Shown: positions 16,999-37,260 of the stretch, piece by piece
How the letters are laid out: each line of letters begins with the position of its first letter
Position numbering within the stretch: position 1 is the stretch's first letter
Assembly: GCF_947568905.1 (NCBI RefSeq)
Contig: NC_079172.1
Coordinates: forward strand, 69,874,001 to 69,938,000
Direction of reading: 5' to 3'
Length of the DNA stretch: 64,000 nt
Origin: Ostrea edulis
Lineage: Eukaryota
Program-made: the position numbers and the translations under genes
Notes under the pieces: generated by a model
Seen by the model: the letters and a program-made list of their open reading frames with translations, nothing else
Told to the model about the DNA's origin: nothing
Database searches by the model: none

Positions 16999-19900
16999 CC
17001 TCCAGTGATCACGTCGAATATCACTTTTTGAAATGTAAATCGTAGTAACAGTAGTAGATTCTTTGTTATCAAACACTTTAGAAAACAATTTATTTGGAAG
17101 AGTCACTTCTAAGTCATCAATTTTTGATTGGTTTGTTAAAAAAAAGTTCTTAAACGTCGTTGCTTTGTCAAAATTGTTTTCGTAAACATTACCATTAACT
17201 TCTAAGGGAGGTAAGTCATGACTGGTTTGAGTGTTTGATATCTTATTCACCATATTCCACCACTTTTTTAAAATCATTACACTCAGATATATTGTTTGAA
17301 ACCTTTTTGTAATAGTCGTCGCGAGCTTTACGCACGTTGCAAATACAATGATTTCTAATTTTCTTAAATTCTGACCATTTACTACGAATGAGTGTTCTAA
17401 TTGTGTTATTTAACCAGGGGGGATCTGATTTTTTTATTGTCACCATTTTATTACGAATATTGATTTTTGCATGTTTGATAATGGTTTCGTTAAATCTTTT
17501 TACATTAGTGTCGATATTAGTATCGGCTAATAATTCTTCCCAATCAACTAAATTTAGGCTTTCTCTATATACATCGTAATTTCCTTGGCTGATTAACCAT
17601 ATTTCACGTTTAAAAGATGACAGACTTGATTATACTGGCTGATCAGGGCATAAACAGGACAATGATAACGAATATTCTGATCAAGAAAACAACCACCAAG
17701 ATAAACTTTTCTAGAATACTATCATCACTAACTATAATGACATCTAGAAGGGTAGAAGAGTCTTCCGTGAAATGTGTTGGTTCGTCGATTAATTGGGTCA
17801 TATTGTACATGTTTATCATACTGGTAAGTTGATCGGATTGATTATTATTGGTCAGTAAATTTGCGTTAAAATCGCCCATGATTATGATTTTGCTAATTTT
17901 GGTGTTAAAAGCCAAATCTATAGAGTATTCAATGTCATTCCATAAAGATACGGGCGAGTTAGGCGGTCGATAAAAGGTTCCATACAAATAAGTTTGACCA
18001 AACACACTTGACCGTGGTCAATTCAAGATCAGTTCGGTGTTTTGCGAAAGTGAATCTATTCGGGTCAAATGATTGTTTGGTGTGTCTGTTGATGTATTAG
18101 ATAATGAACATGTGACAGATTGCAGGGAGGTAGGTGCTGGATTAGTTTCGATGTCACCTGATCGGAGAAGTAAAAAATACCAGAAATTTGGAAGTCTTGC
18201 AGAAATACGAAAACATGCATTATCTGATGTAATTGTTTTGTTAAAAAGGAAACAGTTAAGTGAATTTTCATCGTAATGGACGTTAGATGTGCCAAGTTCA
18301 CTGTTTATAAGAATGAATATGACAACTGTTAGACAGTTTATTCCGTATTGTAAGACTAAATTGATACTAACAAAATCAAACAAGTTTAATAAAGATTTTG
18401 GAAGTATAGCAATACGATAAAATACACCCACGCTGGCCCGAAACGTAGAGGTGTCTACACCCATTGATCAGGTTATACCTGGATTATGATAGATTTCAGA
18501 TGTATACCTTGGGGTCAGGTGGGGTATGTACGTCTACACCCATTGATCAGGTTATACCTGGATTATGATAGATTTCAGATGTATACCGTGGGGTCAGGTG
18601 GGGTATGTACGTCTACACCCATTGATCAGGTTATACCTGGATTATGATAGATTTCAGATGTATACCGTGGGGTCAGGTGGGGTATGTACGTCTACACCCA
18701 TTGATCAGGTTATACCTGGATTATGATAGATTTCAGATGTATACCTTGGGGTCAGGTGGGGTATGTACGTCTACACCCATTGATCAGGTTAGACCTGGAT
18801 TATGATAGATTTCAGATGTCAGGTGGGGTCAGGTGGGGTATGTACGTCTACACCCATTGATCAGGTTATACCTGGATTATGATAGATTTCAGGTGTATAC
18901 CTTGGGGTCAGGTGGGGTATGTACGTCTACACCCATTGATCAGGTTAGACCTGGATTATGATAGATTTCAGATGTCAGGTGGGGTCAGGTGGGGTATGTA
19001 CGTCTACACCCATTGATCAGGTTATACCTGGATTATGATAGATTTCAGATGTCAGGTGGGGTCAGGTGGGGTATGTACGTCTACACCCATTGATCAGGTT
19101 AGACCTGGATTATGATAGATTTCAGATGTCAGGTGGGGTATGGGAATGAAGGAAATGGTGGTAACCGTTAATAGGGACATTTGATCTGCGTGTGGTAAAA
19201 ACATGCTATGAACATCTCTGTCAAAAAAATAAGAGAAAATGCAAATAAACAACAAATATGTACATAGGAAAACGGAAATTGGGATCATTCCTAATGATAT
19301 GGGTGCAAAATATTGTGGAAAGGGTGAAAGATACTGGTAAGGTGTTTACGCTAATTAACACTAACCAATGGGATATAGGTATTTATCGCTAGATGCAATG
19401 ACAATATAATATAGTTATTATAAATGTTTGTATAGATGAATTAACAAAGAACATGAGTTGTCAGACATTATCAGCTGGTATGAATAGAGCATTATGCATA
19501 CTAGGCAGTGCACGATGTATGAATAACAACAGTAGTCTATGTAGAGCCACTCTAGCTCTTTCATCACGTGACCAAAGGGGATCAGGTCCGACTCCTTCCG
19601 GACCGCGTAAGTCCTATCCCCATTGTCACGGACGTTGATCTTTCCATTTGATGACCATGCCTGCTTTAACTTGTGTTCTCGACAGACCTGCCTACACAGG
19701 TAGAGAAGACGATCACGATATTTGGTCAGATCTTCATTAATTGCGATGTGCCTAGTTTCAGTTTGCTTACGCAGCTTCTTTGCGTCCTTCATCAATGAAA
19801 ACTTCACATCAGTAGTGCGAAGTCTGACAATAATTTGTCTCGGTGAATTCCTTTGTTTCCGAGGATCGCCAACGCGGTGGGACGTAACAATATCGGTGGG

Positions 19901-20020
19901 TGCAAGTGGAACTCCCGCGGATGATGTAACTTTAAGAAGTTTTTCAGTATAGTTGATTCATCGGATGATTCAGATATTCCGGAAACCCGGATGGTGAGCG
20001 TTTGACGCCTTTTATAGTCA
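16990..20020 (-). mobile_element. CR1/Crack-type LINE: ORF1 + inter-ORF array + APE part of ORF2; RT missing
   Basis: ORF1 (~19550-20010) reads IRVSGISES, SHRVG..PRQIIVRL, INEDLT, WSSNGKINV (L1-like RRM/CTD). ORF2 (~17000-18330) reads LLLRSGDIETNPAP, GTFYRPPNS, IMGDFNA, PTHFTEDSSTLLDVI, DPPWLN. It is frameshifted and 3'-truncated. Confidence 0.8.
18453..19141. repeat. 79-bp minisatellite, ~8.7 copies, between LINE ORF1 and ORF2
   Basis: Unit GTCTACACCCATTGATCAGGTTATACCTGGATTATGATAGATTTCAGATGTATACCTTGGGGTCAGGTGGGGTATGTAC; period 18453->18532. Confidence 0.95.
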
Positions 20021-22183
20021 TGTGACTTTAGACCAGGGTTGGATTTTTCATATTGTCCAGTGGGTTTGATGTGTTCAGACGTTTGAGTTTTAGTTATAGT
20101 TGAAGCTATTTCGCCATCAGGGTATGTTGGGTTTTTCTTTGTTGTTATGGAAGCAATAGCATCGCAATTGGTGCTCTTTAAAATTATATTGCTAATTTCT
20201 AACAAAGTGCATGTTTAACTTTTATTGCAGTTGCACCAAAGAAGCTTTGATTTATAGTACACTTTGCATTTGATAAATATCAAGCCTAAAGTCCATAACT
20301 TTGGTAAGTTATACTACAATGTATTTAGACTCTTTAAGCAATATAAAAGTCAACTAAAACTTTTGACTTTACACTTTACACTGGGTGTAATAATAATAAC
20401 TCCGGTTTCGTGGGTTTTATCTTTATTGTGGTGATGATTGTTGCATGACCCTGAAAATGAATACAATAACAATAACTCTGCATAAGAAGTTTTACAATCA
20501 AGGTCCTTATCAAAATATTAAAAGAGAGGTTAAAATACATAGAAATTATGAATTACAATAATTTCTTGAATCAATAATCTTTCCCTAAGCTTAGCATGAA
20601 TAAGCTTATCATAGTAAAGAGTTTATGATATACACAAACTGAATAAATTCTAAACAATAGATAATTCATGCTAAACTGCTAAAGTACATGAATTGAACAA
20701 AACGAAAACTGACTATAAATGCTTTAACAATTTGCTTGTGAAATACTGAATTTATAGTAAAACATCTCTACAATTAACCTTACCTCCCATGAGGTGCAAA
20801 GGTCAGTGCAAACATTAAGAAATCCTCCTACTTTATAGAATGTGTTGATGTTCTAACTATAATAAAATAGGTATTTACTGTAGAGTTATAATTTATTGCA
20901 TGAATGAATATTTACTCTTACGTATTTATAAAGTGTAATACATTCATTCTCTCCTTTAAAAGTTAAACACATTAATTTGAATCTTATTTAATTATATATC
21001 AATTATTTACAGCATTCGTGCAAACTTGCAAAGATCATTCACTCCTCATATTGTCTATCATTCAAACATTCACTCAGACAAGATAAAGTAGTGAAAATAA
21101 AGAAATAGTGCATCCTAACTTTAATACTAACCTGCTCAAATACAATAAATCTGCATCCAATAAATCAATCCACTAGTAAAGAACAAACTACTATATGAAA
21201 CTTTTATCGAACAACCCTTCTGTGCCACTTAAGCATGAAAACAAGAATACCTGTCCTCAAAAGAAATTTCCCTCCTAAAAACCATGTGACCAAGCTAGAG
21301 TGATCTATAAATAGTAACAATTATCCTAAAGAAAAACCTGTTCTGCATAGTAAGCAGTAAAATTTAATAAGTAATGAAATAACAAGACAAACACAAGTCA
21401 TAGTTATAATAATGATTTCAATTAGATAAAACTTTATTCTCATATCAAATTTCAAAACTCTGTAAAGAAATTGAATTAAAGCAATTTATTTTCAAAAAAT
21501 AAAATCCCTGAAATAAAGTATTAAAAACATGTAAAATTCACTCTATTACAATAATATAAATAATTTGTTTTTAAACTTAATATTTTTCTCATTTATTAAA
21601 TATGAATAATTAGGTTCGGGGAATCACTTTTTATAAAATTGTGATTAAAGTGCTTGAATATCATTCATTGATATAGCTTTGTGCTAAGTTTCAAATGATT
21701 CAACATATGTATATATAACATGTACAAAATGTATATAATTATGCATTTGACGTGATGTACATTTTCATGTCATTTTGATATGCAACTGACTAGCTGTTTG
21801 TTACAGGGGATTTCAATGTATACTATTTATTGTGCAATTAACTTAAGATCGGTCTTGCCTTTTACAGACAGCATCCATCGACGGAGACTGTAGGTCTTCT
21901 AGATCTTAATCTATAAATAAGGTATCAAACATTTCACTTGCTATCAACCTCCAACTAGACCTAATATCGTCCAAAAAGTAAATATCTCTCTAACAAATGT
22001 TTGCTTTGATACAGAGTACAAACAAAGTCTTGTGTTGGCCTGTTATCAACTCTGAGTTTATCAGTTTTCCGTTTAAATGACAAAAGTCATTTTATTCTTT
22101 CCGGCAACGCTTTTAAGTTGTGAATTATCCTTGGGCATTTATAATGTGGCCTATTTCATTTCATGCCGGTATATAACAGACCA

Positions 22184-22406
22184 TTTCGCGCTTTATATAT
22201 AGAATAGAATAGATTTATTGAAACCAATTTATGTATATATGTAAGGAGGAGAGAGGGTGTGGTTTGTAATTCATTTTATTTATGAGTACATGTATTAATC
22301 AACCGCCTTTGAGAATTAAATACATTGTGGGAAATCTCATTCATGAATCTATACGAATATTAATGGAACGACATGTCCAGATTCCACGTGATCAATTATT
22401 CCCGCC
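22184..22406 (+). promoter_or_regulatory. Candidate E2F sites and E-box upstream of MCMBP
   Basis: TTTCGCGC at 22184-22191, CACGTG at 22385-22390, and TTCCCGCC at 22399-22406 (40 nt before the ATG). MCMBP/ETG1 is a known E2F target. Confidence 0.5.
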
Positions 22407-22445
22407 ATAATTCACCATTGTAAACAAAGAACGTGAAAGAAAACC

Positions 22446-25400
22446 ATGCCTGGTGTCGAGGATTGGACCACAAACCCATTAGGGATCGTACAGAGTATTT
22501 ATGGTAGACCCACTATGTTGTAAAATGCCGTTGTTTATGAATGTTATGTAAAATACCAATGTCTGACCACTGGCACAGATTGACAGAAGTTAGAAATGAT
22601 TTATTAGTGACATATCTTATACAAGTTATAGTGAATTTTTTTAGGATTATGACTTGATGAGAATAAGTTTTTCCACAGGGGCTAAGCCCGTTTGGGCTCG
22701 AACTCTGTGATACCATAAAATGGCATAAATATATGAATTTAAATAGAGTGAATTATGATCGAAGTTCATTTTCATGCATTACACATGTACTTCTGACTCT
22801 CAACTACTGATAAACTTTTCACAAAATTGTTTGGAGACTTCTTTACATAAAAAAGCATTTGTCCAATCGGACAAGTGCCCATCAATATTCACTTGTCCGA
22901 AATGTTTTTCCACTGGTAGCGGACAAGTGTAAATGTTGACCCCTGGATTCGCTGTCTAGGACTCGGGGAAAGCCTCGTCCTAGACTTCGAATCTTGCCCC
23001 CTCGGTGGAATTTTCCTATCCCACACTCGTACTAATGAAGGATTCTATTAGTCTTGCATTAAAACTATTTTTTGCATGCATAGAATAAACAACACGACAA
23101 ACTCCGGATACATTCGCATATTCTCAGTTTCTTCCATAAAAAAGACCGGATGTAAACAAAGTAAGAATATTTGCTCATGGAAACAACAATCGTTTCTGTT
23201 TGAAAGATAATTCAAATTCATCAATGAAAAATAAAGTTGTTTTTTTTCAAAATATTGATCTTATATTTTTCAAATCTGTGTACAAAATGATCAGCGCAAT
23301 TTATGCACTCTTTTCTTCCACGTAGATTCAATTCATGTGTTCTCGGCATGGCTTCGTTTTGAGGCCTCGACTGACAGTAAACTAATAGATGGGGTCAGAT
23401 GACCCTGTCTAAAAATGGAACCGAATTTGACTCGAACAACACGACCCGCAGTTGCAGCCCCTATACAGCGTATTTACTAATTATGCATTTCTGTTACAGA
23501 TAAACATGGACCAGCTAGTTCAGAGAAGGTTAGGGAATATTTCCTCAGCAAGACGGAATCAGAGACAGCGCGACTTTGGGTAAGATCACATGATTTGAAA
23601 GTTTGAAGACTATCTGCTGTGGTGTAAGGTATTTTAGAGATGGAGGAGGAGGGGGGTCATAAAAATAAATGAAAATAATCTGTTTTGGTCCCCTCACCAG
23701 AATACAACCTCTATAGACATATTTTAGGAAAGCAAAGTAGATCTTCTCCACATTGATATATATTTGAATTGAATTGAAATATGATTGATTATAGAATATT
23801 GTTTAATGTCCCTCTAGAGAATCTTTCACTGATATGGAGACATCACCATTGCCGGTGTAGGACTGGATCAATATATCGATTATCAACATACCTCGGTATT
23901 TTTGAGCTATACGATAACCGATACAGCGAGTCGCATATCGTTTAATATATTAAAAGTGGTTATTAACATATCTTGCAGCGAGATTTCATGAACGAGTTAA
24001 CAAATAAATTGAAAATATACGAACAAACTATCTAAATGTCATTTGCTCCATGACTGCATACAACACAAACATGTGTCAAAAGTGTGCGCGTGGTGACAAT
24101 ACAGTGGTCTCAGTTTTCAAATATTACATATCTGTAGCTTAAAAAACCCAAAGTGTAACGTTTGTGGAACAGAGGTCGTAAGCTCTGGTGGTACAAGTAA
24201 TTTAACAACACATTTGCAATGACATCATGAAGCTAACTGTCAGAGAGAAATCTATCGATGAATGATGTATGTAATGATCAGAGTTGAACGTGATCTGCAG
24301 TCGCATTTGTATGAAGAAATATATGAACAAATAAATGAAGTTATAATTCATTTGTGAATATTCATCCTGAAAATAATTTCCTCTGCTGCCTTAAGACTTA
24401 GAGCGAGAGATATTGTATCAGCAACTAGGGTTTGTTTAAAGCCAGAGAATGTGGATGCCCTTGATTTCATGAAGAGAAAAATATGTTAACAATATTGATA
24501 AAAGCAAATAGATAATAATTTCATGCACAATTGTCTTTTATGATAGATTAATTCAAGCTAACACTATATATGCAAATGAAACAAAAAGAATAAGTGAAGC
24601 TATATTTTTGTTATTTTTTAATTCTCAAAATTAAGTGTAAATGTACTTATATTATATCGTCAATGCGTATTGCATATTGTCACTCTGTATTGCAACACGT
24701 ATCATATCGAAATTTTCCAAACGATACCCAGGCCTGTGTTTTTGCAGTTTCATCATCGCCTCTTATCACAAGCTATAGAGCTATGAGAGTCACAGGCCAT
24801 TTAGAAGGTTGTTAATGTAAAATAGAATATTTCTTTGGTATACAGTAAAACTCGAATATAGCGAACACGGATATAGCGAAATTACAGCTATAGTGAAGTG
24901 AAAACAATTTCCCTGGCAAATTCTTTATATATTCTGTATAAAAATCTGCGTTTATAACGAACACGGATATAACGAATTTACGGATATAACGAAGTAAATT
25001 CCTATTCCCTTTGAATTAAAAATGAACGTAAAAATCACCTTTTATAACGAATATCTTTTTTTCATTTTAAACATGCGATTTTTAAAAATGGTTTTCCATT
25101 GCCATAAAGGATCCACACTTATTACGAAATTTCTGTTTGTATTTTTTCAAAAAAGGTTGTTAACGCAAAACAATACTTACACATATGTTTAGCAAATATA
25201 TTGTCGGTATTGTTTACTATTCTTGTTAATCAAATTTGAAATTTGATTGCATTTATTTTATCGTACACTCCTTTATTTGTGTAAAAGAACAAGTAAATGA
25301 CAACTGCAATAGACTGTTTGTACATGTATGTATTGCGCATACTTTTGTTAACATTTTTCTCTCGACATGTTCTTTAGTGACTTAATAATCAATCAAGATA

Positions 25401-28400
25401 AATTATTATATATAAATAATGTGTATATTTTTGGTGTAAAAATATTTCTTCTTGAAAATATATAGGCTTAAGTTCTCTTAGAGACAATACAAACGCAAGA
25501 ATATCGATTGCCGCTTTTTTGTACAACTGATATACATGTAGAACAAATCAGTTTTATAATGAATTCGTTATATTTGAATTATGAATTCGCTATAAACGTA
25601 CAGCGAATTACGCTTATAACGAATTTTTATAGAATGTCCGCAGAAATTCGCTATATCAGAGTTTTACTGTATTGAGTTTGGAGTTGAGTTAGATGTTTGT
25701 TCTGATTATTTTTGTTCATTATTATGCTGTGACCTTTACTAGGATGTTGACATGATTTTCAGGTTCCCAGTCTCAATGATACCCCTCTCCACTGCCTGGT
25801 CCCGAATTCTCTGGTGCGATACAGGTGTATGATTCAGGACATGTACGACCCCGAGTTCTACATGGGCGAGTACGAAGTGTCTGATGTCGCCACAAAGACA
25901 ACCTCGATGAAGTCGGGACTGTACAAGGACATAGCGGAATGCTCTGTTTGTACCCTGTCTTGTTATTCATTCTGATAATTAATACTCAAAGATAATTAGT
26001 CTGATTCAATATAAAATCTGCTAATTATATCTAGATGACTCAAATTAATTCAAAGGTGTGATTTTACTGCAGATTATTTTTTTTTTTCTGAATATATTTA
26101 TATTAATGTAACATTTGCATTGGGATTAGATGATTGAAAGGTCAATAAAACTTTGAATATCCTCTTCCAATATCTGTTTGCTACAAAAAGAAGTCTTGTT
26201 TACTTCAAGCAGGCTTTGTGTTTATCACACTTGTGTGATGTAGCTGTTGTGTCTTTTTCATATATTTTTTTTTCCCCAGAGAGGTTAGGCAAAATCGGGA
26301 TGCAGATTTTACATTTAGAAATTATGTAGAGAAAAATATGAAGATAAAAGCAAATGCAACAGACTCGTTGTATGAGATGAGATGTTTAGCACTTCTACAA
26401 AGATTCGTCATGGGCATGAAAAACAATGGACATTTATGGTTTTAAACATCCTTTCCCTAATTTCTGTAAATGAGGTATACATGTAGACTTACCATCATAC
26501 CATGCATTTCTGTGGACTGCTTATATTATACAGATATTTTGTTATTGTAGAAAAATCAAGAAATCAACACAGAATCTGAAAGAAATGTGACAATGGAGAG
26601 ACAGACACTGTACTGTGTGCCCATTCCGGGAGAGACGGACTGGGTCAAGTCAATATCCTTATAATGTCAAATCAGTATAGTTATAATGTCAAGTCAATAT
26701 CCTTATAATGTCAAATCAATATCCTTATAATGTCAAGTCAATATCCTTATAATGTCAAGTTAATATCCTTATAAAGTCAAATCAGTATAGTTATAATGTC
26801 AAGTCAATCGTTATAATGTCAAGTCAATATCCTTATAATGTCAAATCAGTATAGTTATAATGTCAAGTCAATATCCTTATAATGTCAAGTCAATATCCTT
26901 ATAATGTCAAATCAGTATAGTTATAATGTCAAGTCAATATCCTTATAATGTCAAGTCAATATCCTTATAATGTCAAGTCAATAGTTATAATGTCAAGTCA
27001 GTATAGTTATAATGTCAAGTCAATATCCTTGTAATGTCAAGTCAATATCCTTATAATGTTAAGTCAATATCCTTTTAAATATAATAGCAAGTCAATATCC
27101 TTATAATGTCAAGTAATGTCCTTATAATTTCAAGTCAATAGTTATAATGTCAAGTCACTATCCTTATAATGTCAAGTCAATATTCTTATAATTTCTAATG
27201 AGTATAGTTATAATGTCAAGTCAATATCCTTATAATTTCAAGTCAATATCCTTATAAAGTCAAATCACACTATAGTTACAATGTCAAGTCAATAGTTACA
27301 ATGTCAAGTCAATAGTTATAATTTCAAATGAATATCCTTATAATGTCAAGTAATATCCCTATAATGTCAAAGTAATATCCTTAAGTTATAATGTTAACAC
27401 CAACGAAGTAATCTAATTGTCAGTATATATTTTTGAGAGACGAGTAGAAGATTGAGTTTTTGAAGTGCAGGGAATGCAGGTATCACATCAGTGTGTTTTA
27501 TTCCTTAACTCTGTAATGGTTATTCAGACAAGACTGGTAAGAAAGGTTTTCCATCCTCCTCAGTGACCCCTAGCAGGTCAAAACGAGGATTGGAGGAGGA
27601 TAATGAAGCTCCGCTGGACACTCGCATGGAGGAAGAGATGGACAGCAAGATAGAGGACAACAAACGACCTCGAAGAGATGTGCTGGAAGGTAAAATTGAT
27701 TGTGTTTGGTGAAAATAATTTCTTACATTGGTAGGCAGTTTTTGACATGAGCATGTGGTATTGCAGTGCCAAACTCACTGCAAGCGAAAATACTCTATTT
27801 AAATCATAAACTGTTGTGTTTGTTGATGTATTTATAAACGTGTGTCTCCTATTGATCGAGAATATTATATCATGTACTTCACATTTGTAAAGTAAAATGT
27901 GTCTTTTTAGGATCAATACCTTGCAATAACCCTGATCTAAACTTTCCCTTGCCTGGAGAGAAAGGACTGCCATGTTTAGTAAAGGTAACCTTTCTTTATT
28001 TTGAGGAGCTTCTAAATTGCTAAAGTTTGTAAAGTATGTGCATTAGAGTTGTTCCAGAATTAAGGAGGTAAGCTACACCAGAGGAATTTGATATGGATGA
28101 AAAGTGGGGGATATGTACAACAATATTTTGAAACTGAAAACTTTCAAATTTACTTTATTTAGTCAAAAAATAGTTTTAGTTGAAAGCAATCTGAGAAAAA
28201 TTTAAAACCCCTGCTGGACTCGAACACGCGATCTACAGTTCAGCAGTCAACGTGCTAACCAACTCAGCTAGGCGAGAATTTTTTAAATGAATAGACAAAT
28301 ATTGCTGATATTTATATTTTCCACCATGTTTTAAAAAAAAGTCAGCCATTATCACGATGTAGAGTACCTCCTTAAATGGGGAGGAAAGAGGGGGCAGATG

Positions 28401-31267
28401 TTTTCTATACTCACCAATCATGATTTTATTTTCTTTCCAACCACCACCACCTACATATTTCATTTTCTGACCATATCAAACCACCTATTGATTGGTTGTG
28501 TATTGTTTAATGTCCCACTCGAGAATCTTTCACTCATACGGAAATGCCACCATTGCTCTCTATTGGTACAGAGTCTGGCTTCCTATAGATTAGGTCAATT
28601 GTTAATGTTTTCTGTCAGATGGAAGAAATTATAGCCGTAAAATTCCTTGCTAAAGACTTTGCATTCTTTTGGATGGAGGGTGTTTTGAGTTGTAAGAATG
28701 AATTGATAAATAAATCAACTTTGAGTGTTGTTTCATAATTTTAACTTAAAAACTGTTAGAAAGTTAGAATCGTGCAAATATGTGTCCTTATTGTGGAGAA
28801 TCAGAAAAGTGTTTAACTTTGGGTCTGCATCTTCCCAGCATATTCACAAAAATCACACAAAGACGGTGACTACATTCAGAACTGGTGACCTCTGGGGTCC
28901 CACCTTTGGGGTCAATGCATATTATAACTACAAATGGCAAATAAAGTCAGAAAGAAAATAATTCAGAAATCAGCATTTTAATGATATAACAGGTTAATTG
29001 TTCCAGATTCATCCAGAAAAGATGTAATATATAGTCACAAACATGCTATTTTTTACTGGCAGTTACAGCTTAGTTTGCCTTTCAGTGACATGAGAAGAGT
29101 GATAGTAAATGCCTACATTAAGTTTTCAGTCTTCACGAAAACATTTAAAATTTGCTGGCCAGTCGGACCAGTGAACTGTCTGAATTTACTGGCCCACAGT
29201 GAAATTTACTGGCCCCCCAAATTTTTATAGTACATGTTTATCACATACATTATGGAATGCATTGTAAAACTGTACAATTAATTTACTGAAACTATGGTTG
29301 TTACTCATATTCATATCCACCCTAAGACATCCTTTTTATCGATACCAGAAAAACACTGTTGTTTTCTCTCTTTCTCTTCGCCCGCAAACAACAAGACTAC
29401 AAATTCATGTATTTTTCACAAACATGATAACAGCCAAGTGCACCTTAAGAAGCAGCCTTCTCTACCAACATCAAAAGTAAACGGTTAATTCTATAAGCTA
29501 TAGAAATTGCATAAAATCAGAGATAACTGCAATTGACGAAGTTCATCTAATTGGACATTGTAATAAAGCAGCAATTACCGGTGTGCAGTGTGATACAGAA
29601 CGCGGCCATTTTTGTTGTTTCAACAAGTTGTTCGTTGAATATTCACATGATCAACGTACAAGTTATCTTGACAATTACAAGTACAGTTACCATAAGAAAT
29701 AAACAAACCACGATGTTCAAACACTTACTTTATGAGCTATTTATTGATTTATTTTTATTTTGACAGTAAATTTAAGCAAATAAGACGTTTAGAATATCTA
29801 AATCCAACACATATTTAATGTGACTTACAAAAAGTCTACAAGCCTATAGGACTTCCTGATTTTTTATTTTCACTGACCCAATCGTAAAATTCACTGGCCT
29901 CGGTCTTTGGACCACTGAATTTTCGTGAAGATTGAGTTTTAAGCATTTTTAATACCAACCATGCACAATTTTACTTTGGAACACTACAGCGATGGCAATC
30001 ATCTATATAAAATTTGAATTACCCCCAGGTATGCATAAAAAAGAAATGGTACTTGACCCCCACACAGTTAATTCTGTAACTCTGATAACAGCTCTTAGTA
30101 GAATTGATTGAAAACATACTAGTATATTGGTGATACTTTACAGGTTTACGAGGATATGGATGGTTTTGCGGTCACTGATATGATCGAATTTATTGGAGTT
30201 CTGTCTGTTGATCCTTCATTGGCTCATGTCTACGACGAAAACAGGTACAGGATATTCTGGATTTTGAAGAATTGGTGCATGTCTACTATCATAATGAGTG
30301 TAGAGGTGTACAGGTATTGGTTGTTAACGGGAATCACTTGGTTTAACAGGTTGGATGGCTTACAGAACAGTATAGAAGGTTATGAAGAACCGATGGAGGA
30401 GAGAAGTGCTCACGCTCCACCTCCTTCCCTGGTGCCGAGGCTTCACGCTATTATTCATCACAAACTGAAACACAATAATCCGCATGTACCCGCAGAAAAA
30501 GAAAAAATAGATACAGGTAGAAGATGATGAATTTATGTCTTAAAAATATAATGGGGAGGATAATATGCAAATGTTGGTTTTCAAATTTAATTTGTTTATT
30601 AGCTGTGTTTACATCTGTTGTAGATGTGAAATCTCTGAGGGCGGAAATCTCCTCATTACGACGTCAGATCCTGTCAGCTCTGGAACAGGTGATGCTGGGA
30701 GATTCTCTGGCAGCTGAATACTTCCTGTGTCACTTGATTTCTTCCGTGTAAGACTGTGATAATTTTATTTCTTCTGTACATCACCATATTCTAGACATGT
30801 TTGTGGAGACACACTCAGAAATTAACTTTACCTGATTTTGTGATACAGTAAAACATGTTGATGATGAACACACTTAAAACAAATTCATACTTATTGCAAA
30901 GTGATATATATTCCCCAATGAAAAAAAAATAGCGAAAATTTTATTGGATATAATGAAGTTTCGTTATGACGGAAGTGTTTTTCGCTGGCCCCGGAGGTTC
31001 CCTATAACCATGTTTTACTGTATAACAAAGTTTGGTTTTAAGGAATTGTTTTTTCGCTGGTCCTGGAGGTTCGCTATAATCATGGTTTACTGTATAATGA
31101 AGTTTGGTTATGGGGAACTGTTTATCGCTGGCCCAGTAGGTTCCCTATCGGTGTTTTACTGTATACTGGTAAATGCTTTCTTTGTTATGATGAACTGTTT
31201 TTAGCTCACCTGAGCTAAGTAAGCTTTTCTGATCACTCGTCCATCTGTAAGCTTTTTGCGTATTCAA

Positions 31268-31300
<33 letters not shown>

Positions 31301-32578
31301 TTGGCAAAAAGCATCTTTGGGTGAAAGGCTTTCAAGTTTGTTCAAATGAAAGGCCATGCTCCCTTCAAAGGAGAGATCATCACAAAAATGCAAAAATAGA
31401 GTGGGGTCATTTAAAAATCTTCTCAAGAACCAGTGGGCCAGAAGAGCAGAAATTTACAAGAAAGATTCCTGACAGTGCAAATTCAAGTTTGTTAAAGCCA
31501 TGACCCCTGGGGGGTAGGTTGGGGCTACAATAGGGGATCAAGTTTTACATGCGAATATATAGGGAAAATCTTCTGAAGAACCACTGGGCCAGGAAAGTAC
31601 AAATTTACATAAAAGTTTCTTGACATAGTGCAGATTCAAGGCCAAAATCATGGCCCCTGTGGGTAGGATGGGGCTACAATAGGGGATCAAAGTTTTGCTT
31701 ACAAATATATAGGGAAAATCTTCTTTTCAAGAACCATTGGGTCAGAGATATTTACATTTTCATGAAAGCTTCCTGACATAGGCCGCTTGTTTGGTGGCCC
31801 TGAAGGTTTTCTATCACCATGTTTTACTGTATACCGGTATTTGCTGTCTTTGTTCAGGTATGGAAGAGCTGATGTAATGCCGTTGGGCAAGTTCAGTTTG
31901 AATCTCACTCACTGCCCCCCAACAAATGAGTATGGACAACTAATTCACACTTTTATGGAGGCACTAACAACCAAGGTATCTATTGATTTGACAAGTAGAA
32001 ATTGATGATGTCATCATTAACTCTCTCTCCTTTTTATTTTGAGAGCAATGTCACTAAGACTAACCTTTTTAGCATTAGCATGGTAGTCCAAAGGACTAAT
32101 GACTATAGTGACCGGAACATTTTCCCAGTCCTGTATAGTTCTCACTAGTCCAGCTGCCAAAGACAGTCTGCTGAGGGGGAGGAGGGGGGTGTCCATTTTG
32201 AAAATGAAGCAAAATCCTGTGATTCTGATGAAATTTAGGATATTAAATGGAAATTCAATTACTCTAGTTTTAAGCATTTAATTTTCATGAAAACTACAAG
32301 TTGATGAAAAAGAATTCAAAACTTGATTGCATAGTTATTGTGTCTCTATAGAACAAGTCATTTGAATGCAGGCCACTGAACATTTTAAATTTACAGGCCT
32401 ACCTTGTGATCCATTGGGGAAAAATGTCCTCACATTTTATTAATCTTTCACATTTAAGCAGCTGTCTACTAACATGTGAAGAGATATTTTAAATCGGTTT
32501 TAATTAGCTCACCTGAACCGAAGGTTCAAGTGAGCTTTTCTGATCACATTTTGTCCGGCGTCCATCTGTCTGTCTGTC

Positions 32579-32617
<39 letters not shown>

Positions 32618-33423
32618 ATGAACCACTGGGCCAATTTCAACCAAACATGGCTAAAAGCATGAAGGTGAAGGGCTTTCAAGTTTGTTCAAATGAAGGGCCA
32701 TGTCCCTTTCAAAGGGGAGATAATCACAAAAATGCAAAAATAGGGTGGGGTCATTTAAAAATCTTCTCAAGAACCAGTGGGCCAGAAGAGCTGAAATTTA
32801 CATGAAAGCTTCCTGACATATTGCAGATATAAGTTTGTTCAAATCATGGCCCCCGGTGGTAGGATGGGGCCACAAGGGGGGATCAAAGTTTTACATACAA
32901 ATATATAGGGAAAAACTTTAAAAATCTTCTTCTCAAGAACCACTAAGCCAGAAAAGCTGATTTTTACATGAAAACTTTCTGACATAATGCAGATTCAAGT
33001 TTGTTCAAATCATGGGCCCCGAGGGTTGGATGGGGCCACAAGGGGGGATCAAAGTTTTACATACAAATATATAGTTAAAATCTTTTTCTCAATAACCACT
33101 GAGTCAGAAAAGCTGATATTTACAAGAAAACTTTCTGACATAGTGCAGATTCAAGTTTGTTCAAATCATGGCCCCCGGGGGGTTAGGATGGGGCCACAAG
33201 TGGGGGGGGGGGGGGGGGGGGGGGTCAAAGTTATACATTCAAATATAGGAAAATGCTTTAAAAATCTTCTCAAGAACCATTGGGCCAAAGAAGTTGACAT
33301 TTACATGAAAGCTTTCTGACATAGTGTAGATTCAAGTTTGCAAAGGGTAGTTTGGGCCATACTAGGGACTAAGGTTTTACATGCAAATATATATGGAAAA
33401 TCTTCAGATATGGGCCAAGGTGA

Positions 33424-33457
<34 letters not shown>

Positions 33458-35499
33458 ATTAATTAGATTGAACTTTACAAAGTTTTTGCTTAGTGGGCTT
33501 TTATTATACAGTGTCATTTTTTCCCGCTGTCCATTGAGAACATGAATAACCTAAGGCTGAGTCCAGAAAAAGATTACACTGCTAACCGACTGCGGAGTGG
33601 TCTGCTACAACTGTCAGCTGACACGTCACTGGTCATTGATGAAACGCAGCTTCAGCCGGGGCAGCTGGAAGCCACAGGTCAGTTAGCTGTTTATAGGTAT
33701 TTCTATAATACATGTGTTTTATGCATCAGTTTAGAGTGTATTTAGAACTCGGACGAAATATCGTAGGAAATGAAAATCCATTTTAGAATTATGTCAGTGT
33801 TTCCAATTATGGATCGAAATAATAAGAGTTCTGCTTTAAAAGAGAGGTTATAGGCTTGGCAGGAAATGATAATGTTAAACATTTTACAAGCAAGAAGGGG
33901 AGGGGGTACAATATAGACAGTAAGTAAAGACAAAGTTGTACAATTGAAGGTTGCTGAAAATGTTTATGATTTCAGGTGTGAAGAATATGACGGCTCTAGG
34001 AAACCTGATTAGTTGGCAGAAGGTGGAATATGATTTTCGCTTTCATAAACAAGATTTCCTGTCCAATGTATGTGTGTTCATCTTATCGGAAGCGAAGTCC
34101 ATCCTGCCTGTAAGTATGTTCTGTGAATTGGATAGTTCTGGGAGCTAAATTTCTTCTCATTCTAGGCCATTTTTTCAAAATTTGCTTGTTTCCCCTTTCC
34201 CGACCCTAAAATTCAGAAGGTCAGTAGACAGGTAAAAAGATTTTTTAGCCTTCAAAATGTTATTTGGTATGAAATGCCCATGACCATTAACAAAGCTTGA
34301 TACCAAAACGTCATGAAGCACATCATTCGGAAATTCAAAAAAAAAAAATCGCTAGAATGACAAAATAAACCCTTTTGGATCGGTGTGACTTTCTCGGACT
34401 TGGACGGGTGAGGGGAAACAAACAATATTTTTATTTGGGCCCTAAATGATATAAGGTTATGAATTCAGTGGAAGACCAGCAAAAGCCTGCTATGAATAAG
34501 TGAAAATGAAGTGGAACTATGGCGAGAGACAATGGTCAATATTTCATTATAATGAAACCTTGCCATTTTTATGCTGTCACCTGCTGGACATATAATGTTA
34601 CCCTTTTCCATCATTCCATCATACTATTATTTCTTGCATGTTAACGTTAATCAACAAAGCACTTTTGATAGTCCAAGTATAAGGAATAAAATAATACTAC
34701 GATTAAGCTTTCTTCAAAATGGTTGTTTGAAACCTATCGTAAATTTTTGGATTATTGCAGAGTGATTGCTTGGTGCCCTTGAACCCAGCCTGTGTAGTGG
34801 AAAATCTTCAGAGACACTTCTCACAGCTTGATGTGGTTCTGACCCCAGAATTTCTGGGTCACGTGAGAAGTTTCCTGACCATTTGCAAACTTCAGGAATA
34901 CACAATTAGTGATGATATGCAAAAGGTAAGTAAGATGTGTAGGTCCTATCTGGAAGGTAACATTGAGCTCTGTAAGCATTGTGGTGCAGTAATTTTCTGT
35001 TTAAAAAACTCTTGTACAAAAGAGATTAAGATTAGGAGTATGCTATTAGGAAATATAACGGGTACCGTTACAATGTTGACAATTACGAGGTAAAAACGGA
35101 CATTTAATGTTCACGCTGTGACTACGTTTCAGGCAATCCAGGATGATTTTGTGGAGATGAGGAAAGAGGACCACAAGTCTATGACAGTGGACGATTTCCA
35201 TACCTTGCTGAATTTAGTCAGGTTTGTAATCAAGTTTATAAATTAGTTGCAGTTTACCTTGTATTTTCATTTTGTACTGACGTTTCTGAAACGTACAATT
35301 TTTGTTTGCCAAGTTACTAAGTATCAAGAATAGTCGCTGTAGGTGAGAGGGTTGTATGTAGACATCTTTGCTTTTCAATGACAGGTTGTTATCGCTGAGT
35401 GCCCTAGAAACCTCTCCAACACAGAGTATGTGGGAAAAAGCAAAAACAATGGAAGCTGAAAGGAAAAGGAGGATTCTAATGTCAAACAACACGCCATGA
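22446..35499 (+). CDS. MCMBP: Mini-chromosome maintenance complex-binding protein, 15 coding exons
   Basis: Exons: 22446-22503, 23500-23579, 25763-25945, 26551-26652, 27518(or 27530)-27689, 27911-27984, 30144-30244, 30350-30516, 30603(or 30624)-30747, 31858-31975, 33512-33677, 33976-34109, 34761-34925, 35133-35221, 35385-35499 (TGA). All phases join. Hallmarks: [117 protein letters not shown]. Confidence 0.95.
23866..24735 (+). mobile_element. Internally deleted hAT transposon inserted into a SINE (MCMBP intron 2)
   Basis: BED-finger remnant [22 protein letters not shown] (~24150-24220) and C-terminal dimerisation-like remnant [12 protein letters not shown] (~24430-24470). SINE halves lie on either side. 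Confidence 0.6.
24843..25669. mobile_element. pogo/Tigger-type MITE with TA TSD
   Basis: TIRs CAGTAAAACTCGAATATAGCGAA and TTCGCTATATCAGAGTTTTACTG (21/23 match), flanked by TA on both sides. Confidence 0.85.
26644..27400 (+). repeat. 22-bp minisatellite built from the U12 5' splice junction
   Basis: The unit GTCAAGTCA|ATATCCTTATAAT alternates with the variant GTCAAATCAGTATAGTTATAAT. There are 18 exact ATATCCTT including the real site. Confidence 0.95.
26653..27517 (+). other. U12-type (minor spliceosome) intron 4 of MCMBP
   Basis: The 5' end is |ATATCCTT directly after ...WVKS. The branch point TTCCTTAAC is at 27501-27509. The 3' end is either TGTAAT| (27517) or CAGAC| (27529); both are phase 0. 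Confidence 0.85.
30843..31172. repeat. pogo-like MITE remnant with tandemly repeated right ends
   Basis: TACAGTAAAAC start followed by three ~70-bp units each ending (G/T)TTTACTGTATA. A fourth lies at ~31790-31832, beyond the Helentron-like insertion. Confidence 0.6.
31198..31782 (+). mobile_element. Non-autonomous Helentron-type element (HINE) with internal satellite-like repeats, 3'-truncated
   Basis: Starts TTAGCTCACCTGAG and has repeated CTCAAGAACCACTGGGCC cores; same family as 32504-33457. Confidence 0.7.
32504..33457 (+). mobile_element. Non-autonomous Helentron-type element (HINE), complete
   Basis: 5' TTAGCTCACCTGAA, (GTCT/GTCC)n microsatellite, tandem ~160-bp cores, 3' GGTGAGCGATGT and palindrome GGCCCATGGGCC-TCTTGT. 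Confidence 0.8.
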
Positions 35500-37260
35500 T
35501 GCTTGGCTATTTTAGATATCCACATTTCATTTGATAAACTTTTTAGGTCACTTGAGATGACCTATTGCGATTAGTAGTTGTCCATGATCTGTTAAAATTG
35601 TGAACATATTCAACTTCTCTGAAAACGCATGGTCATTTTTTATTTTGATTTTGACATGGAACAATTTTGGGGTTAAGGGTGCCCTGGAGCTCAAGAGATT
35701 GGGATCAAAGCAACAGGGATTGAGACTCTAGGGCAAATCTAAAGAGTGATAATATTCGTGTTTTGAAAGTCATCTTTATCTTTTACTTAAACTTCTATGT
35801 CTATGGTTATGAAGAGCATGAAAAATACTACCACAATTGTGGAATTCACGCCGTTCTATGACGTGTAGTTACTGAGGATTCAGGTAGCAGTAATGGTATA
35901 GTAGTAGTAGTAGTTTTATTCAGGCAGAACAATCATTTTGTATAAAACATCATCAAAATATAGATAAATAAATACACATGTTAATTGTATAAAACTTAGC
36001 ATACCCGATGTTATCACAGTCATTTTATCACAGTATTGTCATCACACACAAGATATTATCACTGCTGCATTATGTACTTATATCACAGTCTACCTAGGAT
36101 AACCCATTAAAGCAAAAATATTATTGCTTATTTCCAATGGGGTCCTTGAGAATTTAAAATTATATCTTTGTCAGTAAATAAATTACAATTGGATGGCATG
36201 GACAGCAATGTTTAAAATATGTTGGTAAATGAATGATATAGTGTAGCCTGAATAGAGTAAGATCAATGTACAATTAAAAACTTACAATGAATAATTAAAA
36301 GTGAATGAGGTTCAATTTACAGTGAAAATATATACAGTGCATGAAGTTTTTAGAATGCTTCTTTACGCATGGAATTTTGTGTATAAAATGTGGAAACCAA
36401 GGACAATTTATTTGCATTTTTAGAAAAATATAAAACGCCTTGTTTTATTGAGTTGTCTATTTAAAGAGATATTACTCGGATGACTGTTAAGGCCTTCAGG
36501 CCTATTGTTACATTTGTTAGTGTGATGATAAATGATATTTAAAGTGGAATAAAATTGTTTTGAAAACAAAGTTGCCAATGTTTGTCAGCAGATCTCCGTT
36601 CAGTGACTTTGACATATTGCTGTATTATATCGATTTTTCAAATGAGATGTAAAATTTTGTCCCGTGTCCGAGAGATCATAACCCTTATGACACAAAAAGA
36701 CTGTCATCATGGAATAGTTATGATAGAAGAAAAAAAAGCAGGCTATTAACCAGCCACCACAAACCGGATTCTAAAAGATACTTGATACAAACAAAATATA
36801 TTTGGTTTAGTTTGGTTATAGTATTAAAGTACAAATATAAAATTCCTGAAATAAAGGTAGATTTTCTATGCTTTTAAAAGGGTTGAAATGTATAACTATA
36901 TACAAATCCCCCATTGTTTTGGACTTCGTTGAGGAATATTAGAATTAAATTACATTCCAAATGGTATATTGTATTCAAATTTGGTTTCATTTTATGGTTT
37001 GGAAAGAGTTTGTTTATAGCAAGTGTCGGGAAAGAGAACACTCAACTTCCAAAGCCAGCATGGCTGAAGTATCGCGAACTTGGCTTAAAATATAAAATAA
37101 TTGCTATATAAACCTAATAAACTTACAATCAATAAATACAAAGTATGTAAAAACAAAGTGGCAACATCTGGATTAAGATATTGTAGTTTCATTTGCCCAA
37201 GACATTGTATGTAACCCATGGGTACCTCCATTCTCGTGGTTTTTGATGATGTGTATTTTG

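What the first reader, a model, noticed from the sequence alone, without database searches (positions are those of the whole stretch)
26644..27400. Minor-spliceosome 5' splice site amplified 17-fold inside the MCMBP U12 intron
Seen: the 22-bp unit is 9 nt of exon 4 plus ATATCCTTATAAT. There are 17 extra exact ATATCCTT, interleaved with a mutated variant (GTATAGTT) that destroys the motif. Reading past the true site gives ATA TCC TTA TAA, so use of any decoy would create a premature stop. Established: U11 snRNP recognises this highly constrained motif and is of low abundance, and tandem U12 5' sites (the USSE in SNRNP48 and RNPC3) regulate splicing. Inference: the array may act as a U11 sponge or USSE-like element, or as an NMD-coupled rheostat on a replication factor.
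Basis: partly seen in the sequence, partly recalled or inferred. Interest (0 to 1): 0.82.

Follow-up and report, generated by a model that had tools for sequence, protein, structure and literature searches.

The report
Repeated minor-intron start in oyster MCMBP
In the flat oyster's MCMBP gene the start of a rare minor-spliceosome intron has been copied head-to-tail 34 times, leaving 17 perfect spare splice signals, but the mRNA contigs seen use only the first, and other molluscs lack the array, so it looks like a young repeat and not a control device.

Summary
Window 26644-27392 is a 22-bp minisatellite of 34 units. The unit is the last 9 nt of MCMBP exon 4 plus the first 13 nt of the intron. 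It carries 18 exact ATATCCTT: the real site and 17 extras.

RNA contigs from three runs join 26652 to 27518. The donor is therefore the first ATATCCTT. The intron is a true U12-type intron with branch site TTCCTTAAC 9 nt before the 3' end, and its termini are the unusual AT-AT. No RNA contig enters the array.

The same U12 intron, at the same codon, is present in Crassostrea, Magallana, Saccostrea, Pinctada and Haliotis. Each has a single 5' site and no such array, so the amplification arose within the lineage leading to Ostrea edulis.

This is the U12 counterpart of junction-spanning minisatellites already known from human F7 IVS7 and the amphioxus "mirages". Earlier notes of this scan report many of them elsewhere in this genome.

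The sponge, USSE-like and NMD-rheostat readings have no support. The array is not conserved, it is not in a minor-spliceosome gene, and I saw no alternative isoform. Rare decoy use hidden by NMD cannot be excluded with contigs alone.

The array is a good natural test of U12 5' site choice, but probably has no function.

The parts
25762..25945 (+). MCMBP coding exon 3
   Evidence: RNA contigs X7, X1, X2. Matches Pfam MCM_bind positions 31-74. The joined frame is open.
26551..26652 (+). MCMBP coding exon 4 (34 codons, KNQEIN...GETDWVKS). Its last 9 nt, GTCAAGTCA, are the exon part of the repeat unit.
   Evidence: RNA contigs cover exactly 26551-26652. Matches Pfam MCM_bind positions 76-107, E 1.5e-10. 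100% match to the O. edulis protein model.
26653..27517 (+). U12-type intron 4, 865 nt, with termini AT-AT
   Evidence: Joint 26652->27518, 'skips 865, ends AT..AT, both 0', in X7 (depth 63), X1 (19) and X2 (23). All other introns seen are GT-AG.
26653..26661 (+). Authentic U12 5' splice site, ATATCCTTA, the only one seen in use
26644..27392 (+). 22-bp junction-spanning minisatellite of 34 units, with 17 decoy ATATCCTT at 26697...27375
   Evidence: Zero RNA contig depth inside it beyond the 9 exon bases.
27501..27509 (+). U12 branch-point sequence TTCCTTAAC. The distal A at 27508 lies 9 nt before the last intron base.
   Evidence: Sequence. The same element is at the same place in S. cucullata, C. 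virginica, M. gigas, Pinctada and Haliotis.
27516..27517 (+). 3' terminal dinucleotide AT. The AG at 27526-27527 and the AC at 27528-27529 further on are not used.
   Evidence: Joint. The frame check shows the exon begins GGT TAT TCA GAC = GYSD.
27518..27689 (+). MCMBP coding exon 5
   Evidence: RNA contigs. Open frame. Protein model.

Best explanation
This is a young minisatellite of the 'mirage' / F7-IVS7 kind that arose within the lineage leading to Ostrea edulis. A 22-bp duplication spanning the boundary between exon 4 and the U12 intron of MCMBP was expanded to 34 units, by replication slippage or unequal exchange. That lengthened an ancestrally short intron (about 170-230 nt in Saccostrea and Magallana) to 865 nt.

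Splicing goes on as before. The minor spliceosome pairs the first, exon-adjacent ATATCCTT with the single branch site TTCCTTAAC and cuts 9 nt behind it, at an AT. The 17 identical downstream copies stay silent, or are used so rarely that their stop-containing products do not show.

The first site probably wins because only it sits next to the real exon. Exon definition would act across the 102-nt exon 4 and its purine-rich stretch GGGAGAGACGGA just upstream, with 5'-to-3' order of appearance favouring it too, as shown for identical U2-type donors in F7 IVS7.

Shown here: the structure of the array, the joint that is used, the U12 signals, and the absence of the array in other molluscs. Inferred: how the array arose, why the first site wins, and that the array is neutral.
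For: - Structure of the array, with its first unit spanning the boundary.
- Spliced contigs in three runs (O. edulis X7 with 0 mismatches; a relative about 3% diverged, X1 and X2) all join 26652->27518. Depth in the bin 26644-26817 equals the 9 exon bases alone (63.1 x 9/174 = 3.26), and depth is 0 over the rest of the array.
- The NCBI protein model has the same joint, WVKS|GYSD.
- The orthologous U12 intron has a single 5' site and no junction array in C. virginica, S. cucullata, M. gigas, Pinctada imbricata and Haliotis rufescens.
- The exon part of the unit, GTCAAGTCA, is orthologous coding sequence (GTCAAG[G/T/A]CA in the other oysters). The unit is therefore local, not from a transposon, and occurs nowhere else in the window.
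- Precedents: the first of several identical donors is chosen in the human F7 IVS7 37-bp VNTR (PMC1557585), and amphioxus mirages do not disturb splicing (PMC3087553).
- The neighbouring gene in this window carries a U2-type donor array of the same build at 45498-45662.
- Earlier scan notes report many such arrays in this genome.
Against: - Only assembled contigs were available, not raw reads. Contigs drop rare variants, and NMD would remove decoy-spliced mRNA, so low or moderate decoy use is not excluded.
- Eighteen intact sites, 11 of them in units identical over all 22 nt, could also reflect selection to keep U11 binding rather than recent expansion. The data cannot tell these apart.
- The array RNA is predicted to be unusually unstructured (z +3.78). 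The decoys are therefore accessible, and their silence needs an active explanation.
- For strong, occupied U2-type donors the site nearest the 3' splice site is often preferred. This is my recollection of the literature and was not checked here. The rule for U12 introns is not known.
- Array length in other O. edulis individuals and in other Ostrea species was not seen.
Confidence: 0.72

Rival explanations
1. NMD-coupled rheostat. A fraction of transcripts is spliced from one of the 17 decoys. Each adds ATATCCTTATAA..., so a stop codon at the fourth codon, and the mRNA is destroyed. Array length or minor-spliceosome activity would then tune MCMBP output.
For: All 17 decoys carry the full 8-nt motif, and 10 of them sit in units identical to the real junction over all 22 nt. 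The stop is real. The sites are not masked by structure. NMD would hide the products from steady-state contigs.
Against: No decoy joint appears in any of three runs, at mRNA contig depths of 19-63. The array is absent in five other molluscs, so it is not an old regulatory design. The analogous U2-type arrays are silent (PMC1557585, PMC3087553).
Confidence: 0.12
2. Cis-acting U11/U12 landing pad, working like a USSE. U11 bound to the decoys raises the local concentration of the scarce di-snRNP, or strengthens definition of exon 4. This would help removal of the slow U12 intron or of the upstream U2-type intron 3.
For: U11 bound to tandem U12 5' sites activates an upstream U2-type 3' site through exon definition (PMC5473595, PMC3584512). 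The unique 3' part of intron 4 has no contig depth in X7, while part of intron 3 is seen at depth 8. This is weak evidence, since a hole in contigs proves nothing.
Against: The array is not conserved, and the single-site orthologues manage without it. It lies in a gene with no role in the minor spliceosome. No alternative 3' site is seen in use. The motif positions +1, +5 and +6 are the least conserved columns of the unit at 56-59%, which does not suggest selection to keep U11 binding.
Confidence: 0.08
3. Trans-acting U11 sponge. The array soaks up U11 snRNP and lowers minor splicing across the cell.
For: Only the number of sites per transcript.
Against: A handful of nascent MCMBP transcripts carrying 17 sites each is small against the roughly ten thousand U11 particles per cell reported for mammals (my own knowledge, not tested here). 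The array also leaves with the intron lariat.
Confidence: 0.01
4. Assembly artefact. The array length or sequence is a mis-assembly.
For: No read spanning the array was examined here. Short-read contigs stop at the array.
Against: The window is identical to the public chromosome-level assembly GCA_947568905.1. Both flanks are confirmed by contigs of several runs from three or more studies. The higher-order pattern with many private variants is typical of a real minisatellite. A 740-bp array is well within the length of long reads (inference).
Confidence: 0.03

Closest known systems
Human F7 intron 7 (IVS7) 37-bp VNTR minisatellite (Borensztajn et al. 2006, PMC1557585)
   Same: The first repeat unit spans the exon-intron boundary. 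The authentic donor is followed by identical pseudo-sites. Only the most upstream site is used, and the pseudo-sites normally stay silent.
   Different: F7 has a U2-type GT donor recognised by U1, and several copies. Here the donor is a U12-type ATATCCTT recognised by U11/U11-48K, with 17 intact decoys and one shared U12 branch site. There is no experimental dissection here.
'Mirage' minisatellites of amphioxus (Adh3 and globin genes; PMC3087553)
   Same: Tandem duplications of exon-intron boundaries with units of 10-160 bp. They are unstable in length, they do not interfere with normal splicing, and they look like a genome-wide habit of the species.
   Different: All described cases are U2-type boundaries. 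The amphioxus MCMBP gene lacks this intron altogether.
[quoted passage not shown]
   Same: Tandem U12-type 5' splice-site motifs, most of which are not used for splicing.
   Different: The USSE has two copies, is ultraconserved from plants to animals, sits in genes of the minor spliceosome, and activates an upstream U2-type 3' site to make unproductive isoforms. This array has 18 copies, is restricted to the O. edulis lineage, sits in MCMBP, includes the working 5' site as its first copy, and shows no alternative isoform.
Rous sarcoma virus negative regulator of splicing (NRS), a U11-binding pseudo-5' splice site (cited as ref. 79 in PMC3584512; the rest is my own knowledge)
   Same: A U12-type 5' site motif that binds U11 but is not spliced.
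   Different: The NRS is a single viral element that holds back splicing to a downstream 3' site. Nothing here shows such an effect.

Membership tests
U12-type (minor spliceosome) intron | Extended, highly conserved 5' splice site /[AG]TATCCTT | tested here: met
   /ATATCCTTA lies at 26653, exactly at the joint seen in RNA.
U12-type (minor spliceosome) intron | Branch-point sequence TCCTTAAC close to the 3' splice site, with no need for a polypyrimidine tract | tested here: met
   TTCCTTAAC at 27501-27509, 9 nt before the last intron base.
U12-type (minor spliceosome) intron | AT-AC or GT-AG termini (other 3' ends are rare but documented) | tested here: inconclusive
   The termini are AT-AT. 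The orthologues have AT-AC (C. virginica, S. cucullata, Pinctada), AT-AT (M. gigas) and AT-AA (Haliotis). PMC3584512 states that non-canonical termini occur naturally and support U12 splicing.
U12-type (minor spliceosome) intron | Orthologous intron of the same type in other species | tested here: met
   Same position (after WVK-S/A/T/Q, phase 0) and the same signals in five molluscs. Human MCMBP is reported to contain U12-type introns (PMC7612377), but I did not check their position. Amphioxus has lost the intron.
U12-type (minor spliceosome) intron | Removal depends on U11/U12/U4atac/U6atac | not testable with these tools
   Needs knock-down or in vitro splicing.
Junction-spanning ('mirage' / F7 IVS7-type) minisatellite | Tandem repeat whose first unit spans the exon-intron boundary | tested here: met
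   The unit is 9 nt of exon plus 13 nt of intron, and the array starts at 26644.
Junction-spanning ('mirage' / F7 IVS7-type) minisatellite | Authentic site followed by identical pseudo-sites | tested here: met
   17 exact ATATCCTT decoys, and 10 further units identical over all 22 nt.
Junction-spanning ('mirage' / F7 IVS7-type) minisatellite | Only the most upstream site is used, and normal splicing is kept | tested here: met
   There is a single joint, 26652->27518, in three runs, and no contig in the array. This holds at contig level only; rare use is not excluded.
Junction-spanning ('mirage' / F7 IVS7-type) minisatellite | Length instability or polymorphism; young and lineage-specific | tested here: inconclusive
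   Lineage-specific: absent in five other molluscs. Polymorphism within O. edulis was not seen, because the only reads call went to the RNA runs and short-read contigs cannot span the array.
USSE (U11 snRNP-binding splicing enhancer) | Tandem U12-type 5' splice-site motifs | tested here: met
   18 copies, mostly 22 or 44 nt apart. The USSE has two.
USSE (U11 snRNP-binding splicing enhancer) | Deep evolutionary conservation (plants to animals; ultraconserved in vertebrates) | tested here: not met
   Absent in Crassostrea, Magallana, Saccostrea, Pinctada and Haliotis.
USSE (U11 snRNP-binding splicing enhancer) | Activates an upstream alternative U2-type 3' splice site, giving an unproductive isoform | tested here: inconclusive
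   No alternative joint around exon 4 appears in the contigs of three runs. Contigs cannot show absence.
USSE (U11 snRNP-binding splicing enhancer) | Sits in genes of U11/U12 di-snRNP proteins as a feedback loop | tested here: not met
   The host gene is MCMBP.

The most novel reading that the evidence does not exclude
The array makes MCMBP, a factor needed to build the replicative MCM helicase, unusually sensitive to minor-spliceosome activity in Ostrea edulis. U11/U12 particles loaded on up to 17 accessible decoys would either divert a tunable share of transcripts into stop-containing, NMD-degraded forms, or act as a local loading platform. Array length would then be a heritable, fast-mutating dial on a replication factor.
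Probability: 0.1. Interest if true: 0.75.

Novelty: new variant of a known kind. Interest (0 to 1): 0.4.

Why it matters
Tandem repeats that copy an exon-intron boundary are known for ordinary (U2-type) introns. They have been used to show that the most upstream of several identical donors is chosen. I found no description of such an array on a minor-spliceosome intron in the searchable literature.

Here nature supplies 18 identical U12 5' sites competing for one branch site, and only the first is seen in mRNA contigs. The U12 5' site is recognised by a scarce, preformed U11/U12 particle that bridges the 5' site and the branch site. The locus is therefore a ready-made substrate for asking whether U12 site choice follows exon definition and 5'-to-3' order, or proximity to the branch site.

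The locus also shows drift of the 3' terminal nucleotide of one orthologous U12 intron among molluscs (AC, AT, AA). That fits 3' site choice by distance from the branch point.

For oyster biology it is most likely neutral. It adds one more case to a genome-wide tendency of this species to amplify splice junctions.

Tried and rejected
- Raw RNA reads to count decoy against true joints were not available. Usage could not be quantified, and array-length polymorphism could not be examined.
- I first predicted an AT-AC intron ending at 27529, because that keeps the frame. The RNA contigs put the 3' site at 27517, making it AT-AT, 12 nt upstream.
- Transposon or dispersed-satellite origin is rejected. 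The unit occurs nowhere else in the window, and its exon part is orthologous coding sequence.
- Structural masking of the decoys, or a loop bringing the first site to the branch site, is rejected. The intron folds worse than all 20 shuffles (z +3.78).
- No known RNA family lies in or near the array: Rfam at gathering scores over 20000-40000 found only a tRNA-like hit at 37862.
- I looked for selection on the motif inside the array. The motif columns +1, +5 and +6 are the least conserved. This comes mainly from one variant family (xTATAGTT and its deletion form, 12 units) that was itself amplified. The units are not independent, so no test is valid.
- Look-ups of two protein models found no locus (P0175; P0170).
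- Amphioxus was fetched to test for deep conservation, but it has no intron at this position.
- No other Ostrea genome could be reached with the tools. The array can only be dated as younger than the split between the O. edulis line and the Crassostrea, Magallana and Saccostrea lines.

Full report
**What is there.** The window is part of chromosome OX387712.1 of the Ostrea edulis assembly GCA_947568905.1. The locus fetched for NCBI's MCMBP protein model is identical to window 21946-35999. The gene on the + strand is MCMBP. Nine exon-bearing stretches were scanned and eight match Pfam MCM_bind in order along the profile (exon 5 alone gave no match). The O. edulis protein models map at 100% identity onto exons 1-5, at about 22446, about 23500, 25762-25945, 26551-26652 and 27518-27689.

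**The array.** Tandem Repeats Finder reports one array at 26644-27383 with period 22, 33.8 copies and 82% matches, plus a 174-bp higher-order period. The unit GTCAAGTCAATATCCTTATAAT is the last 9 nt of exon 4 followed by the first 13 nt of the intron.
- ATATCCTT occurs 18 times on the + strand inside the array, and 3 times elsewhere in 64 kb, all on the other strand. The total of 21 compares with 3.7 expected, and no shuffle reached it.
- The 22-mer with up to 3 mismatches is confined to the array.
- Split unit by unit, there are 34 units: 11 equal to the consensus, 18 with an intact motif, 7 of a variant family xTATAGTT, 5 deletion derivatives (AATAGTT or AATCGTT), and 4 with single hits in the motif.
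- Reading on from exon 4 gives I-S-L-stop.

**Which splice site is used.** No raw-read RNA run was offered, but three runs kept as contigs contain the spliced mRNA. X7 matches O. edulis without mismatches at depth 63. X1 and X2 come from a relative about 3% diverged, at depths 19 and 23. In all three a single long contig joins 25945|26551, 26652|27518, 27689|27911, 27984|30144, 30244|30350 and 30516|30624.
- The joint 26652->27518 has no ambiguity ('both 0') and skips 865 nt with ends AT..AT.
- Joining these exons gives one open frame...GETDWVKS|[10 protein letters not shown].... NCBI's model has the same sequence.
- The five other introns joined in these contigs are GT-AG.
- The depth in the bin 26644-26817 is exactly what the 9 exon bases contribute (63.1 x 9/174 = 3.26). 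The rest of the array has depth 0 in these runs.

So the first ATATCCTT is the donor, and no decoy joint or retained array is seen. Contigs cannot show absence, and NMD would remove decoy products. This is evidence about the dominant form only.

**The intron is truly U12-type.** It starts /ATATCCTTA. It has TTCCTTAAC at 27501-27509, and it ends 9 nt behind the distal branch-site A (27508), at ...CTGTAAT|GG. It is therefore an AT-AT intron. My own prediction from sequence, AT-AC at 27529, was wrong by 12 nt. PMC3584512 states that the 5' site and branch sequence define the class, and that non-canonical termini occur naturally.

**Comparison with other species.** I reached orthologues through one profile-free search with a conserved exon, two word searches and locus look-ups.

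| Species (calls) | Exon end and 5' site | Branch site and 3' end | Termini | Intron length |
|---|---|---|---|---|
| Crassostrea virginica (35, 37) | GTCAAGGCA/ATATCCTTTT | CTCCTTAAC...GAAC/ | AT-AC | 743 nt |
| Saccostrea cucullata (35, 38) | GTCAAGTCA/ATATCCTTTT | TTCCTTAAC...GTAAC/ | AT-AC | 168 nt |
| Magallana gigas (43, 44, 50) | GTCAAGACA/ATATCCTTTT | TTCTTAAC...GAAT/ | AT-AT | about 229 nt |
| Pinctada imbricata (50) | .../ATATCCTTTT | ...TTAAC/ | AT-AC (inferred) | not measured |
| Haliotis rufescens (50) | .../ATATCCTTTG | AACCTTAAC...ACAA/ | AT-AA (by its protein model) | not measured |

- Each of these species has exactly one 5' site and no junction array.
- Haliotis has an unrelated (TGTATGTA)n array further inside the same intron.
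- Amphioxus has no intron at this position.
- Human MCMBP is reported to contain U12-type introns (PMC7612377). I did not compare positions.

The U12 intron is therefore old, at least as old as the split between bivalves and gastropods. The array arose in the lineage leading to O. edulis. Without the array the O. edulis intron would be about 135 nt.

**What it most likely is.** A tandem repeat whose first unit spans an exon-intron boundary, followed by identical silent pseudo-sites, is a described class. In the 37-bp VNTR of human F7 intron 7, 50 constructs showed that the pseudo-sites are competent but the most upstream site is always chosen (PMC1557585). In the amphioxus 'mirage' minisatellites, splicing is undisturbed and the length is unstable (PMC3087553).

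The neighbouring gene on the - strand of this window has an array of the same build on an ordinary donor. Its 38-bp unit is 15 nt of apparent exon end plus GTATAG..., in 4.3 copies at 45498-45662. Another likely case lies at 46623-47043. Earlier notes of this scan report many such arrays elsewhere in this genome, and two small U12-related duplications. I did not test those notes, and I count them as leads only.

The MCMBP array is best read as one more product of this genome's tendency to amplify splice junctions, one that happened to hit a U12 junction. The U12 5' signal is long and exact, so every fresh copy is a full-strength site. That is why the array looks so striking.

**Why the first site wins (inference).** All 18 sites share at least the 8-nt motif, and 10 decoys share all 22 nt with the real junction. 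The array RNA is predicted to be less structured than any of 20 shuffles (z +3.78). Neither sequence strength nor masking explains the choice. What differs is the context more than 9 nt upstream. The true site follows the exon, including a purine-rich stretch GGGAGAGACGGA, and lies 102 nt from the U2-type 3' site of intron 3. Each decoy follows TATAAT. Exon-definition contacts between the two spliceosomes, and stimulation of AT-AC splicing by purine-rich enhancers, are established (PMC3584512 and references 77, 78 and 80 therein). The 5'-to-3' order of appearance favours the first site as well. This matches the F7 result, but it has not been shown for a U12 intron.

**The functional readings.**
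- USSE membership fails on two tested features. The array is not conserved, and it is not in a gene of the minor spliceosome. No alternative upstream 3' site is seen.
- A trans sponge is implausible on numbers (my own knowledge of snRNP abundance).
- An NMD rheostat or a cis landing pad is not excluded. The decoys are intact and accessible, and their products would be unstable. But nothing observed calls for either.
- The motif positions +1, +5 and +6 are the least conserved columns of the unit (56-59%). This does not speak for selection to keep U11 binding. The variant units were themselves amplified, so no valid test can be made.

**Verdict.** The structural reading is confirmed and sharpened: a U12 intron with AT-AT termini, with the first site used. 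The regulatory reading is unsupported. This is a new variant (U12-type) of a known kind of repeat. It is probably neutral, and its value is as a natural substrate for studying U12 5' site choice.

Noticed in passing
window 27501-27529; L001 2640-2660; L002 3158-3180; L004 2238-2262; L006 about 7120-7150: The 3' terminal dinucleotide of this one orthologous U12 intron drifts among molluscs. It is AT in O. edulis (shown by RNA) and M. gigas, AC in C. virginica, S. cucullata and Pinctada, and AA in Haliotis. It always lies 8-9 nt behind the CCTTAAC box. In O. edulis an AG and an AC 10-12 nt further on are not used. This fits 3' site choice by distance from the branch point.
   Followed up: partly
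window 45498-45662, - strand: A 38-bp unit in 4.3 copies in the neighbouring (CARD-domain) gene. It consists of 15 nt of an apparent exon end (TCTTACTAAAGAAAG) plus GTATAGTCAATGC..., which makes it a U2-type donor array of the same build. The exon has not been checked against RNA.
   Followed up: partly
window 46623-47043, - strand: A 47-bp unit in 9 copies that begins inside an open reading stretch (...ETITSGFVEG) and repeats its end. It is probably another exon-end array in the same gene. The donor position is unclear.
   Followed up: partly
window 26078-26580: Run X7 has a contig at depth 8 that covers the 3' part of intron 3 and runs into exon 4, against depth 63 for the mRNA. The unique 3' part of the U12 intron (27393-27517) has no contig. 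If this is real, the ordinary intron 3 is retained more than the U12 intron. Contigs are too weak to decide.
   Followed up: no
window 28036-28557: Very high contig depth, in the thousands to about 21,000, in all four runs, with many internal joints and loose ends. This is an abundant dispersed repeat, probably a transposon-derived or SINE-like element, inside MCMBP intron 6.
   Followed up: no
L006 5307-5912 (Haliotis rufescens MCMBP): The orthologous U12 intron of the abalone holds an unrelated (TGTATGTA)n / 20-bp array of about 600 nt. It starts about 50 nt behind the 5' site and does not include the site.
   Followed up: no
L007 5612-5794 (Branchiostoma floridae MCMBP): Amphioxus has exons 4 and 5 fused, so the U12 intron is absent there.
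   Followed up: yes
window 18453-19139 and 40198-40959: Two further long minisatellites: 79/156-bp units in about 8.6 copies, and a 39-bp unit in 19.6 copies in a GC-rich stretch. Their relation to exons was not examined.
   Followed up: no
window 37862-37919, + strand: A partial tRNA match in Rfam (35.9 bits, model positions 8-63) between MCMBP and the CARD gene. It may be a tRNA-derived repeat.
   Followed up: no
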